Assembly: GCF_031769215.1 (NCBI RefSeq) | Contig: NW_026782771.1 | Span: 434,001 to 498,000, forward strand | Source of the DNA: Ylistrum balloti | Lineage: Eukaryota | Length of the DNA: 64,000 nucleotides | Reading direction: 5' to 3' | Shown here: positions 33,625-36,600 of the stretch, piece by piece | Layout of the letters: each line of letters begins with the position of its first letter | How positions within the stretch are numbered: the first letter of the stretch is position 1 | Position numbers and translations under genes: made by a program | Notes under the pieces: model-generated | Seen by the model: the letters and a program-made list of their open reading frames with translations, nothing else | Database searches by the model: none | Told to the model about the DNA's origin: nothing

Positions 33625-36600
33625 ATTAAGTAACTACTACGATCATGGCGCTATTACGCGCACGCGCAGTGTCACGCCGGGAGCAGAAATGACAAAACTT
33701 TTGCCATATGTCACTGACAAGACAGTCTCCCGTCACCTTGGATACGCCGGTAAATCTTTGGACCTCGGACATGCTGCCACTTACTACAACCCAGCCAGGT
33801 AAAAAGATTTTACTACATAATTATAATGGTCGTTCTGGAAACCTCTCTCTAGTCAGCCTTATTCGTATCTTTCTCTTTTTTTCTCTTTCCCTGACATATA
33901 TAACAACGAATTTCCAAGTCTTTTTCTGTGCTATTTATGTTTATATATATTACTATGATTTGTGACCCTTTAGGAATGCCCTTTACTCTCGCTACACCAC
34001 CAACGACTGGGGGTTGTCAAACAGTAAGAACTTTTCCATGTCCGACAAGGAACGTTCCTTCGCCGAGCGTCTTAGAGCTGACGCCTGGAGGGCCGTCAAA
34101 GAGACGGACGCCCGCACTCGGAACAGGCAGAACGATATCACAAAGAAGTTAGGTAAGTGTTGCGAGCGCATTGGGTAAGTGCAGCGTCATCACGGGCGAT
34201 GCAGGTCATGTTGGTATAGCATATGAGGCAAACATTTTTTCGAATCGATAGATGACGAAGTATATGTCATATTTAGATATTATCTAGAACAACATTATAT
34301 AGATAATATTTTTAAGTATTTTTCATATTTTTCAAACACAGTGAAAAAATTGTAATGCGAAAATGATTAAGCACATTATAAACTTTCAAATGACATAAAC
34401 TATCTTTCTGGTACTTTTTTCATTTTGCAAGATAAAATGAAAAAGGACACAATGGAATGAAAAAAAAAGATAGGAACATCAAATGATATATATATGGCTT
34501 TGCCTTGCAACTGTATACAATGCCATACAATAACACCCCACAATATAGAGTAATTTTGACGTTATAAGGCACTCCTCATGATAATGATGCAATCCGACAT
34601 AGTGGTAGGCTACAAGTAGCATAGACTTGGGGACTACCAGATATTCTCATTTTTAACCTGTTTGAATTATTTCAGTTGATCATTTGTTATATTTGCATAG
34701 TATTCGTTTAGCATATTTTGAACCGAGAAACATTTGAAACTGTAAAAACCGAAATGATACCGAGCCAAGGCGATTTCACATATTTCCATTCCTTTCGTAT
34801 ATTTTGAATCCCAATTTTCAGGTGAGAGAGTTACAGACATCGCTTTCTTGAAGAGCGAAATCAACATGGAAATAGGGGTAGTTGCAAATGAAACGCAAAA
34901 TCTGAAGGTACCTTGGTTCGATTGCTTTATGTGACGTAGCTAATCAACTTGGGTTGCATGCGATTGCCTGTGATAGAAAAGGAAAATAATATGTATTAAT
35001 ATTTTGTTGTGTGTTTTTTATCATCCTAATAAATTAATGAACCCAGTTATTCAAATTTGGTGTTTTAAAAGTTATCAACAGGGTAAAATGAAAAGAAAGC
35101 AAACAAAATATTCACGATGATAATTTTGGCATTAGCTGATAATGAAAACGCCACAAACTTGAATAACTGGTCAATGGTCAAACGTGGAGCAAAATAACAG
35201 TTTGCATTTTTGGGCGCTTACTTTCTTTCCTCAGGTGAAAGAGTCTATGACATTGCTTTCTGGAAAAGCGAACTTAACAATGAGATAAACGCCATGGCAA
35301 ACGAGACCAGCAATCTCAAGGTAACTAACAACTAGCTACAAATTTCCATAGTCTGAAAATAGTTTCCTTTTTTCACTTTCAAATTCAAATAAAAACAAAA
35401 CGTGGGAATATTTATTACTATTTCAGACGCGTTTCAAGTAAATCAAGTATGAATTTTTGCAACATGAAGTCAATATTATATGTATTCCTACATAAACATA
35501 AAAACTACATATTCCTGTTTCATATTTCATTTTCCCATCGCCATATGGGTTTTAAACGCAATCTGTTTAGATGTATTCATTAAATATGCATTTAAACAAA
35601 CTGAATGCTAATTGCCTTAAAGAGAGTCTGTTAAGAAGTAGCATTGCCTGAGAGACAGTGGTAATGCTAGTTCATATACAGGGACAGTGGATCCATGTTG
35701 GGTAAAGAACGAGATAACATGCGGTGTAAAACAACGATCATTACTTGAACATAAACACTTACTTTTTATAAAAATAAAAAGTAGACGTATTTTTCATAAA
35801 ATTCATCACCCCACTAAACAAGTGAACACACCAAAGAGAAGTAACCCAGAAGTTCCTTTGCTCAGAAATATAAAAACCATCTTATTGACGCTTGAAGTGT
35901 ATGTTATATTAAGCGAACAGTTTTGCCAAACCTTAAATGAGCAAAGGATTCTGAAGAGTCTATTTGAACGTTGAAAAAACAATTCTCCTAATCTTTATGC
36001 AACCAAAACTGAAAATAGATACATACGGTAACGCGGAAACAGTTCTGTTTTATTTGAAAAATTTCAAATCCAGTTATATTACAATAAAGCTTTCGTGCCT
36101 TATCTTCACGTAGTGTAGACCACACAAGTTTTCTATTTCGGAGTTTTATGTTTTCCTATTTCATATGAGTAAATAAAACCGCGAAAGATAGATACCTCGA
36201 AAATAAAACTGATAAAATAAACAACTGTCGATTTTATGACTCCCTCGTAAAAAATGCCATTTGCATAAGTCGCGAAAATCAGAGCCATGTTTATTTTTTT
36301 ATTTATTTTTTTTTTTTTTTTTTTTTTTTTTTTTTTGTTTTTTCATTTTTGTTTCTGTTTTGATTTTTTACACTAAATGGTCGAAAAAAATGAATATGAT
36401 TTCATTTAAAGTGCTTATGGTAGAACCACACTTGATAAATACAACTGTTTTCATCAAATTGCGTCAAATATGAAGCCAAAGAAAAAATATTCTAACAGCA
36501 TCGTCCAATCTTACAGCTGTAAGACAGCATCGTCCAATCTTACAACTGTAAGTGCAATCTTATAACTGTAAAACAGCATCGTCCAATCTTACAACTGTAA

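What the first reader, a model, noticed from the sequence alone, without database searches (positions are those of the whole stretch)
34189..34974. Long-range intronic RNA helix that would loop out exon 4a (docking/selector-like)
Seen: ATCACGGGCGAT (34189-34200, 36 nt after the upstream donor) is complementary over 12 contiguous bp (two G-U) to ATTGCCTGTGAT (34963-34974, 55 nt after the exon 4a donor), extendable by 3 bp across a 1-nt bulge (34201-34203 with 34959-34961). Both are GC-rich patches in AT-rich introns. A weaker 9-bp alternative pairs 34952-34960 with TATGCAACC (35996-36004) and would loop out 4b instead; this may be chance. Known: competing RNA pairings enforce mutually exclusive splicing in insect Dscam, 14-3-3zeta and Mhc. 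Inference: the same mechanism may operate in a lophotrochozoan tektin.
Basis: partly seen in the sequence, partly recalled or inferred. Interest (0 to 1): 0.7.

Follow-up and report, generated by a model that had tools for sequence, protein, structure and literature searches.

The report
Intron helix bracketing tektin exon 4a
In a scallop tektin-3 gene, two intron stretches on either side of the first of two alternative twin exons can pair over about 42 base pairs, more than chance readily gives, which may tip the choice toward the second twin; it is not a Dscam-style docking/selector system and is untested.

Summary
The 12-bp complementarity (34189-34200 with 34963-34974) is real and is the core of a larger imperfect duplex. 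That duplex joins 34186-34232 to 34921-34978: 42 bp, 8 G-U, about -46.6 kcal/mol. One arm starts 34 nt after the exon 3 donor and the other 14 nt after the exon 4a donor.

It beats all 76-111 dinucleotide shuffles (Gumbel p about 0.001-0.002). Real same-geometry sequence from the window matches it about 1% of the time.

The two arms are each other's best partners by about 10 kcal/mol. So this is one helix, not competing docking/selector pairings.

Eight orthologous mollusc loci keep the twin exons, but none keeps these arm sequences. All eight still show a weak excess of pairing that brackets the first twin (Fisher p about 0.003). Exon 4b and exon 5 show no such excess.

Features conserved in the seven closer loci are:
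- equal 86-nt exons, so including both or neither breaks the reading frame;
- a weak exon 4a donor;
- (U)GCAUG within 131 nt downstream of exon 4a.

RNA contigs of a relative show 3-4a-5 and 3-4b-5. I give roughly even odds that the helix biases splicing toward 4b. The scan had already noted the twin exons on another piece of this genome, but not the helix.

The parts
33974..34152 (+). Tektin exon 3 (constitutive). Its donor GT is at 34153. A second consensus GTAAGT lies at 34175-34180.
   Evidence: Translation and Pfam Tektin positions 1-48. The orthologous exon is present in all loci.
34186..34232 (+). 5' arm of the long-range duplex, at +34 to +80 from the exon 3 donor. It sits in a patch that is 56% GC.
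   Evidence: It is not conserved in orthologs.
34822..34907 (+). Exon 4a: 86 nt, phase 1 to 0, the divergent twin. Its donor GTACCT is weak.
   Evidence: A 3-4a-5 contig is present in relative X24.
34921..34978 (+). 3' arm of the duplex, at +14 to +71 from the exon 4a donor. The same-species run X1 carries 34973 A>G, which turns a U-A pair into U-G.
   Evidence: The SNP is, and its energy effect is -32.9 to -32.3.
34955..34960 (+). UGCAUG (Rbfox-type motif), the only GCATG in the 3.3 kb of introns I3, I4a and I4b. Its first four bases lie inside helix 34200-34204:34954-34958.
   Evidence: GCATG lies within 26-131 nt downstream of exon 4a in 7 of 7 close orthologous loci. The product of the per-species chance probabilities over six loci is 6e-7.
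35235..35320 (+). Exon 4b: 86 nt, the conserved twin, with donor GTAACT.
   Evidence: A 3-4b-5 contig is present in relative X24.
35996..36004 (+). It is a chance match.
   Evidence: Its stacking energy of -16.2 is weaker than the best helix in 98% of shuffles.
37627..37639 (+). Runner-up partner of arm 1 (13 bp with 34192-34204), 7-19 nt upstream of the exon 5 acceptor. It is at chance level.
   Evidence: 43% of shuffles do as well. It scores -23.4 against -32.9 for the main pair.
37646..37783 (+). Exon 5 (constitutive), which follows either twin.
   Evidence: The loose ends of the X24 contigs match it.

Best explanation
The two arms are 34186-34232, just after the exon 3 donor, and 34921-34978, just after the exon 4a donor. 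They form one long-range imperfect RNA duplex of 42 bp that encloses the exon 4a acceptor, exon 4a and its weak donor in a loop of about 690 nt.

Inferred mechanism: when the duplex forms, exon 4a is looped out. The path from the exon 3 donor to the exon 4b acceptor shrinks from about 1.1 kb to about 300 nt. Splicing is therefore biased toward exon 4b, the conserved default twin.

It is a modulator of the ratio, not the device that makes the exons exclusive. Exclusivity follows from the 86-nt length, because including both or neither shifts the frame into a stop. Use of exon 4a probably depends on its conserved weak donor plus the conserved downstream (U)GCAUG.

The arm sequences are specific to this lineage, but a weak tendency to bracket the first twin recurs in other molluscs.

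Shown: the complementarity, its statistics, its position, one-at-a-time use in a relative, the frame logic and the motif conservation. Inferred: that the duplex forms in vivo and shifts the ratio.
For: Duplex strength and exclusiveness:
- The duplex is the best I3 x I4a interaction. No dinucleotide shuffle reaches it (0/111, 0/76 and 0/60; Gumbel p 0.001-0.002).
- About 1% of block shuffles and of real same-geometry sequence match it.
- The arms are reciprocal best partners by about 10 kcal/mol.
- The arms are not copies of a repeat elsewhere in the window.

Position and folding:
- Both arms lie within 80 nt of a donor site. The 3' arm lies in the zone that is conserved downstream of exon 4a in the L004/L008 pair (76% over 113 nt).
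- Six of the seven helices have mean pair probability 0.70-0.97 when 34100-35330 is folded whole.
- The only variant in the arms in run X1 keeps the pair (U-A to U-G).

Replication in other loci:
- In all eight orthologous loci with twin exons, the first 75 nt after the first twin pairs with the upstream intron better than the shuffle mean. The p values are 0.024, 0.038, 0.088, 0.098, 0.10, 0.20, 0.33 and 0.34. My own Fisher combination of these printed values gives about 0.003.
- The same test around exon 4b gives Fisher 0.67 and around exon 5 gives 0.60.

Literature: flanking introns of clusters of mutually exclusive exons tend to pair with internal introns (PMC6071210).
Against: - The arm sequences, and the whole 5' part of intron 3, are not conserved in any ortholog. 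No covariation test is possible.
- L004 and L008 conserve the region downstream of exon 4a without any conserved intron 3 partner.
- With contiguous helices only, no ortholog beats its shuffles. The ortholog signal is weak, rests on shuffle nulls of 50-60 shuffles per locus, and the partners sit at different positions.
- Real genomic sequence reaches this energy about 1% of the time, and three intron pairs could have been reported.
- Shuffling arm 1 in silico changes the global minimum free energy by less than 4 kcal/mol and leaves UGCAUG paired with other partners. The fold model therefore does not single this helix out as structurally necessary.
- No RNA-seq of this species was found, so even the 4a/4b ratio is unknown.
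Confidence: 0.48

Rival explanations
1. The complementarity is fortuitous and has no effect on splicing. Two GC-richer, exon-proximal intron patches happen to match. The twin exons are governed only by frame incompatibility, splice-site strength and protein-bound elements such as (U)GCAUG.
For: - The 12-bp core alone is matched by 5-8% of shuffles.
- Real sequence reaches the full duplex energy in about 1% of same-geometry pairs, before allowing for three candidate intron pairs.
- The arms are not conserved in eight orthologs that all keep the exon pair.
- Scrambling arm 1 in silico costs less than 4 kcal/mol of global stability.
- The conserved features (86-nt length, weak exon 4a donor, GCAUG) suffice to explain a regulated exclusive pair.
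Against: - 0 of 247 dinucleotide shuffles reach the observed energy across three window sizes.
- The arms are reciprocal best partners by about 10 kcal/mol.
- Both arms sit next to donor sites.
- The excess of bracketing around the first twin recurs in all eight orthologs but not around exon 4b or exon 5.
Confidence: 0.4
2. A true docking/selector system. A docking site after exon 3 is contested by selector sequences, one per twin exon, and this competition enforces the choice of exactly one exon.
For: The 5' arm sits where the Dscam exon 6 docking site sits, just downstream of the constitutive exon. The 3' arm lies upstream of exon 4b, like a selector. Arm 1 also has a 13-bp match that shares the core ATTGCYTGT just upstream of exon 5.
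Against: - No second partner rises above chance. The 9-bp alternative is worse than 98% of shuffles, and the exon 5 site is matched by 43% of shuffles.
- Pairing with the exon 5 site would skip both twins and break the frame.
- The docking region is not conserved.
- No traces of duplicated intron flanks were found.
Confidence: 0.04
3. The duplex forms but acts in another way. It could bring the UGCAUG element close to the exon 3 donor as an RNA bridge, gate Rbfox-type access to UGCAUG, or promote back-splicing (circularisation) of exon 4a.
For: UGCA of UGCAUG (34955-34958) lies inside a helix with pair probability 0.78-0.97. Inverted complementary sequences flanking an exon are the known geometry for circular RNA formation and for RNA bridges (my own knowledge of that literature).
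Against: UGCAUG stays paired with other partners when arm 1 is scrambled in silico, so any masking is not specific to this helix. An 86-nt circle would be unusually small. There is no expression data.
Confidence: 0.08

Closest known systems
Docking site / selector competing pairings in insect Dscam1 exon 6, 14-3-3zeta and Mhc (PMC4691838, PMC3535345, PMC8042237; titles and abstracts only)
   Same: An intronic element just downstream of the constitutive upstream exon pairs with an element upstream of a variant exon. The pairing loops out the intervening variant.
   Different: Only one partner exists here, so nothing competes. The element is not conserved between species. There are two exons, not an array. 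Exclusivity is already guaranteed by the 86-nt frame rule.
Long-range intronic structures in two-exon clusters of mutually exclusive exons, e.g. human ATE1 exons 7a/7b (PMC7797038), and the general tendency reported by Ivanov and Pervouchine (PMC6071210)
   Same: Two twin exons are involved. The flanking intron pairs with the internal intron. The signal is detected as hybridisation energy beyond dinucleotide shuffles, as in that paper's delta-delta-G method.
   Different: ATE1 has five conserved elements with demonstrated competition and mutational proof. Here there is one lineage-specific helix and no experimental data.
Fox-1/ASD-1 (Rbfox family) control of mutually exclusive exons through UGCAUG in C. 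elegans, for example unc-32 (PMC3585155; abstract only), and Rbfox RNA bridges (my own knowledge)
   Same: (U)GCAUG lies within 131 nt downstream of the regulated twin in all seven close loci. The regulated exon has a weak donor.
   Different: Binding and regulation by a mollusc Rbfox protein are untested. The helix overlaps the motif rather than delivering a distal one.
Frame-incompatible twin exons policed by nonsense-mediated decay (general property of many tandem-duplicated exon pairs)
   Same: The exons have equal length that is not a multiple of three. Including both or skipping both gives premature stops.
   Different: None. This part is ordinary and explains the exclusivity without any helix.

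Membership tests
Docking/selector competing RNA pairings (Dscam type) | One docking site is complementary to two or more selector sequences, one per variant exon. | tested here: not met
Arm 1 has one strong partner (-32.9). The next best are -23.4 and -23.1, at chance level.
Docking/selector competing RNA pairings (Dscam type) | The docking site is the most conserved intronic element among related species. | tested here: not met
   The 5' part of intron 3 cannot be aligned in L001, L002, L004, L005, L006 or L008. It cannot be aligned even between the close pair L004/L008.
Docking/selector competing RNA pairings (Dscam type) | Compensatory base changes or mutational rescue are seen. | not testable with these tools
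   No relative close enough to align the arms was retrievable. One SNP keeps a pair, but this carries no weight.
Single long-range loop-out helix / RNA bridge flanking an alternative exon | Intronic segments on both sides of the exon are complementary beyond matched controls. | tested here: met
   p about 0.001-0.002 against shuffles and about 0.01 against real sequence.
Single long-range loop-out helix / RNA bridge flanking an alternative exon | The pairing is conserved, by sequence or by recurrence. | tested here: inconclusive
   The sequence is not conserved. A weak bracketing excess appears in 8/8 orthologs (my Fisher combination about 0.003) and is absent around exon 4b and exon 5.
Single long-range loop-out helix / RNA bridge flanking an alternative exon | The pairing forms in vivo and changes the splice ratio. 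| not testable with these tools
   No RNA run of this species was found. Only thermodynamic prediction is available.
Tandem-duplicated mutually exclusive exon pair | The exons are adjacent and homologous, with equal length and phase. | tested here: met
   Both are 86 nt, phase 1 to 0, 71% identical in protein, and match Pfam Tektin positions 50-77.
Tandem-duplicated mutually exclusive exon pair | Transcripts carry one exon or the other. | tested here: met
   Run X24 of a related organism holds 3-4a-5 and 3-4b-5 contigs. This was not shown for this species itself.
Rbfox-type regulated exon | (U)GCAUG lies in the proximal downstream intron and is conserved. | tested here: met
   GCATG lies at +26 to +131 in 7/7 close loci and TGCATG in 6/7. 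The chance product over six loci is 6e-7. It is also present at +60 in L016 and absent in L014.
Rbfox-type regulated exon | The exon depends on an Rbfox protein. | not testable with these tools
   No expression or binding data are available.
U2/U12 splice-site incompatibility | A U12-type donor (RTATCCTT) and branch site (TCCTTAAC) are present on one twin. | tested here: not met
   Exon 4a donors are GTACCT, GTATCA, GTATCC, GTACAC and GTACTC. No U12-type branch site lies before exon 5 or exon 4b.
Steric hindrance / distant branch point | The branch point of the downstream twin lies too close to the upstream twin's donor. | tested here: not met
   Intron 4a is 327-688 nt long with 11-35 AG dinucleotides. 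The AG-free zone before exon 4b is only 15-60 nt.

The most novel reading that the evidence does not exclude
Across molluscs, the first twin exon of tektin-3 is kept inside a long-range intronic helix whose sequence turns over between lineages while its bracketing geometry is maintained. This structure works together with a conserved downstream UGCAUG to set the 4a/4b ratio. It would be the first RNA-structure-controlled choice between mutually exclusive exons described in Lophotrochozoa, and an example of structure conserved without sequence conservation.
Probability: 0.22. Interest if true: 0.65.

Novelty: new member of a known kind. Interest (0 to 1): 0.45.

Why it matters
RNA pairing that steers the choice between twin exons is established in arthropods and in a few mammalian genes. 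My literature searches found no such case reported for molluscs or tektins.

If the helix works, it extends the mechanism to a third major animal branch. It would also show that such helices can arise lineage by lineage around an ancient exon pair.

If it does not work, the locus is still a clean example of an old, frame-policed twin-exon pair with a conserved UGCAUG. That is ordinary biology.

The practical value is a sharply defined, cheap experiment: two arms of about 50 nt flanking an 86-nt exon.

Tried and rejected
- Unrestricted RNAduplex on whole introns gave a meaningless intron-long interaction. I replaced it with contiguous-helix and windowed scans.
- Both sequencing-run searches found no RNA run of this species. 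The 0.14-share runs labelled organism B hold only a few words of the 3' end.
- Read laying gave no splice joints for this species. It gave only a DNA-like run X1, plus a relative's spliced contigs. Relative X16 does not cover either arm.
- The protein word search with the exon 4a ORF found nothing. The exon 3 ORF search found 30 genomic fragments, none from a close relative. P0004 could not be located. The P0010 contigs stop before exon 4a.
- The metagenome DNA pattern scan returned one unrelated GC-rich contig, L007.
- I did not use the large representative protein search. Full-length isoform annotations of relatives were therefore not retrieved.
- A U12-type intron, a distant branch point and duplicated intron flanks were all considered and rejected.
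- Specific masking of UGCAUG by arm 1 was rejected, because the motif stays paired when arm 1 is scrambled.
- The stronger energy on the sense strand (-46.6 against -25.1 on the antisense) is not used as evidence. The scan that found the duplex rewards G-U pairs.
- timed out, and one search did nothing.

Full report
**The observation.** The sequence is as described.
- ATCACGGGCGAT occupies 34189-34200, 36 nt after the exon 3 donor (GT at 34153).
- ATTGCCTGTGAT occupies 34963-34974, 55 nt after the exon 4a donor (GT at 34908).
- The two pair over 12 contiguous bp with two G-U.
- Both lie in GC-richer patches (56% and 44%) within introns that are otherwise 30% GC.

**Gene context.** The gene is a tektin.
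- Exon 3 and both twins match Pfam PF03148, and the last exon matches its C-terminus.
- A central exon is closest to solved Tektin-3 chains.
- An earlier scan note calls the genome a scallop and the gene tektin-3. I did not verify the species.
- On the + strand the exons are: exon 3 at 33974-34152, exon 4a at 34822-34907, exon 4b at 35235-35320, and exon 5 from 37646. Further exons run to about 40297.
- Exons 4a and 4b are both 86 nt with the same phase. Their peptides are 71% identical.
- Including both, or neither, runs into a stop codon. The reading frame alone therefore limits productive mRNA to one twin.

**Are the twins used one at a time?** No RNA run of this species was found. Laying four runs on 33900-37800 gave two useful results.
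- Run X24, from a related organism with about 91% exon identity, holds two 136-nt contigs. One covers exon 4a and the other exon 4b. The loose ends of both read exon 3 on one side and exon 5 on the other. These are 3-4a-5 (depth 8) and 3-4b-5 (depth 23).
- Run X1, DNA-like and from the same species, differs at 34973 (A>G). This changes a U-A pair of the helix into U-G and costs 0.6 kcal/mol.

- It is the best contiguous helix between intron 3 (I3) and the intron between the twins (I4a). Even so, 5% of dinucleotide shuffles and 6-8% of block shuffles do as well.
- The proposed second pairing (34952-60 with 35996-36004) is weaker than the best helix of 98% of shuffles.

Allowing bulges changes the picture. 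The complementarity extends to 34186-34232 with 34921-34978. It has 42 bp in seven helices, 8 of them G-U, at -46.6 kcal/mol.
- 32-nt window scan: -30.3 against -21.4 +/- 2.0 for shuffles, 0 of 111.
- 60-nt window scan: -42.8 against -30.3 +/- 2.6, 0 of 76, Gumbel p about 0.001.
- First 75 nt of I4a held fixed and I3 shuffled: -46.6 against -32.5 +/- 3.3, 0 of 60.
- Harder nulls give about 1%. Block shuffles that keep the GC patches reach it in 1/120. Real same-geometry pairs from the window reach it in 1/160 and 2/80. Tiles outside tandem arrays reach it in 0/79, with Gumbel about 0.009.
- Three intron pairs could have been reported, so an honest figure is about 0.003-0.03.
- The arms are each other's best partners by about 10 kcal/mol. 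They are not copies of a repeat elsewhere in the window.

**Does it fold?** In a partition-function fold of 34100-35330, six of the seven helices have mean pair probability 0.70-0.97. This is weak evidence. Scrambling arm 1 in silico changes the global minimum free energy by less than 4 kcal/mol, and the UGCAUG next to arm 2 simply pairs elsewhere.

**Orthologs.** A word search with the ORF that spans exon 3 found 30 genomic fragments from other species. Their contigs gave nine informative loci.
- L001, L002, L004, L005, L006 and L008 all carry the twin pair in the same order. The second twin is the conserved one.
- The more distant L014 and L016 also have two copies. L015 has one.
- The 5' part of I3 cannot be aligned in any of them.
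- In the close pair L004/L008, I3 cannot be aligned at all. The first 113 nt after exon 4a are 76% identical.
- No ortholog has a contiguous or short bulged I3 x I4a helix beyond its shuffles.

**A weak recurrent signal.** I asked whether the first 75 nt after the first twin pairs with the upstream intron better than with shuffles of that intron.
- All eight orthologs fall on the favourable side. The p values are L008 0.024, L016 0.038, L002 0.088, L014 0.098, L006 0.10, L004 0.20, L001 0.33 and L005 0.34.
- My Fisher combination of these printed values gives about 0.003.
- The same test around exon 4b (Fisher 0.67) and around constitutive exon 5 (Fisher 0.60) shows nothing.
- The partners sit at different places in each species.
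- This agrees with the published tendency of flanking introns in such exon clusters to pair with internal introns (PMC6071210).
- It rests on shuffle nulls of 50-60 shuffles per locus, so I treat it as suggestive only.

**What is conserved.**
- The 86-nt length of both twins is conserved.
- The exon 4a donor is weak everywhere (GTACCT, GTATCA, GTATCC, GTACAC, GTACTC). The exon 4b donor is GTAAA or GTAAC.
- GCATG lies 26-131 nt downstream of exon 4a in all seven close loci, and TGCATG in six of them. In the window it is the only GCATG in 3.3 kb of introns. The product of the per-species chance probabilities over six loci is 6e-7.
- This is the Rbfox-type motif that controls mutually exclusive exons in C. 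elegans (PMC3585155, abstract only).
- The conserved logic therefore looks like a regulated, enhancer-dependent exon 4a against a default exon 4b.

**Other mechanisms, rejected.**
- U2/U12 incompatibility: there are no U12-type branch sites, and the donors are only partly similar.
- Distant branch point or steric block: I4a is 327-688 nt with many AG dinucleotides, and the AG-free zone before exon 4b is only 15-60 nt.
- Duplicated intron flanks that could make selectors: none were found.

**Verdict.** There is a single helix that brackets exon 4a, is specific to this lineage, and is statistically unusual.
- The docking/selector reading is not supported.
- The narrower idea, that pairing loops out exon 4a and favours exon 4b, is plausible. 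I rate it about 0.48.
- Harmless chance complementarity gets about 0.40.
- Other actions of the helix get 0.08, and a true competing system gets 0.04.
- If real, it is a new member of a known kind. Nothing here can replace a mutational or structure-probing test.

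Noticed in passing
window 34955-34960; L001, L002, L004, L005, L006, L008 intron after exon 4a: (U)GCAUG lies 26-131 nt downstream of exon 4a in all seven close loci, and the exon 4a donor is weak in all of them. In the window it is the only GCATG in 3.3 kb of introns. This looks like a conserved Rbfox-type enhancer for exon 4a.
   Followed up: yes
window 34175-34180: A second consensus donor, GGTAAGT, lies 22 nt downstream of the exon 3 donor. 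Using it would shift the frame; reading through from exon 3 gives GKCCERIG then a stop.
   Followed up: no
L006 intron 4a about +36 and intron 4b about +13: A 14-nt direct repeat, CACGTGACATTCAG, occurs just downstream of both twin exons in this species only. It may be a trace of the duplication or a shared element.
   Followed up: no
L008 8849-8896 with intron 3 positions 490-539: In this relative of L004, the strongest I3 x I4a duplex (-36.7, Gumbel p 0.005-0.02) covers the exon 4a donor itself. That donor reads GTATCCT, which is partly U12-like.
   Followed up: partly
L014, L015, L016: More distant orthologs differ. L015 has a single copy of the exon. L014 has the conserved 4b-like copy first and the divergent copy second. 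The duplication history may not be a single event.
   Followed up: partly
window 36474-37046 and 36290-36340: The intron after exon 4b holds a minisatellite (open reading stretches that repeat [28 protein letters not shown]) and a long poly-T run. Contigs of run X1 break there.
   Followed up: no
window 43996-44674 (+): Two exons match Pfam Hmw_CFAP97 (Hemingway/CFAP97). This is another cilium-related gene, just downstream of the tektin.
   Followed up: partly
window 50116-50716 (-): A split homeodomain (Pfam PF00046, E 2e-14 and 5e-5) lies on the minus strand. This is a homeobox gene.
   Followed up: partly
window about 6000-10400 and 59171-62080: Two large tandem arrays. The first has extreme GC and AT skew. 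The second is open for more than 900 codons on both strands, and it produces most of the strong duplexes in the real-sequence null.
   Followed up: no
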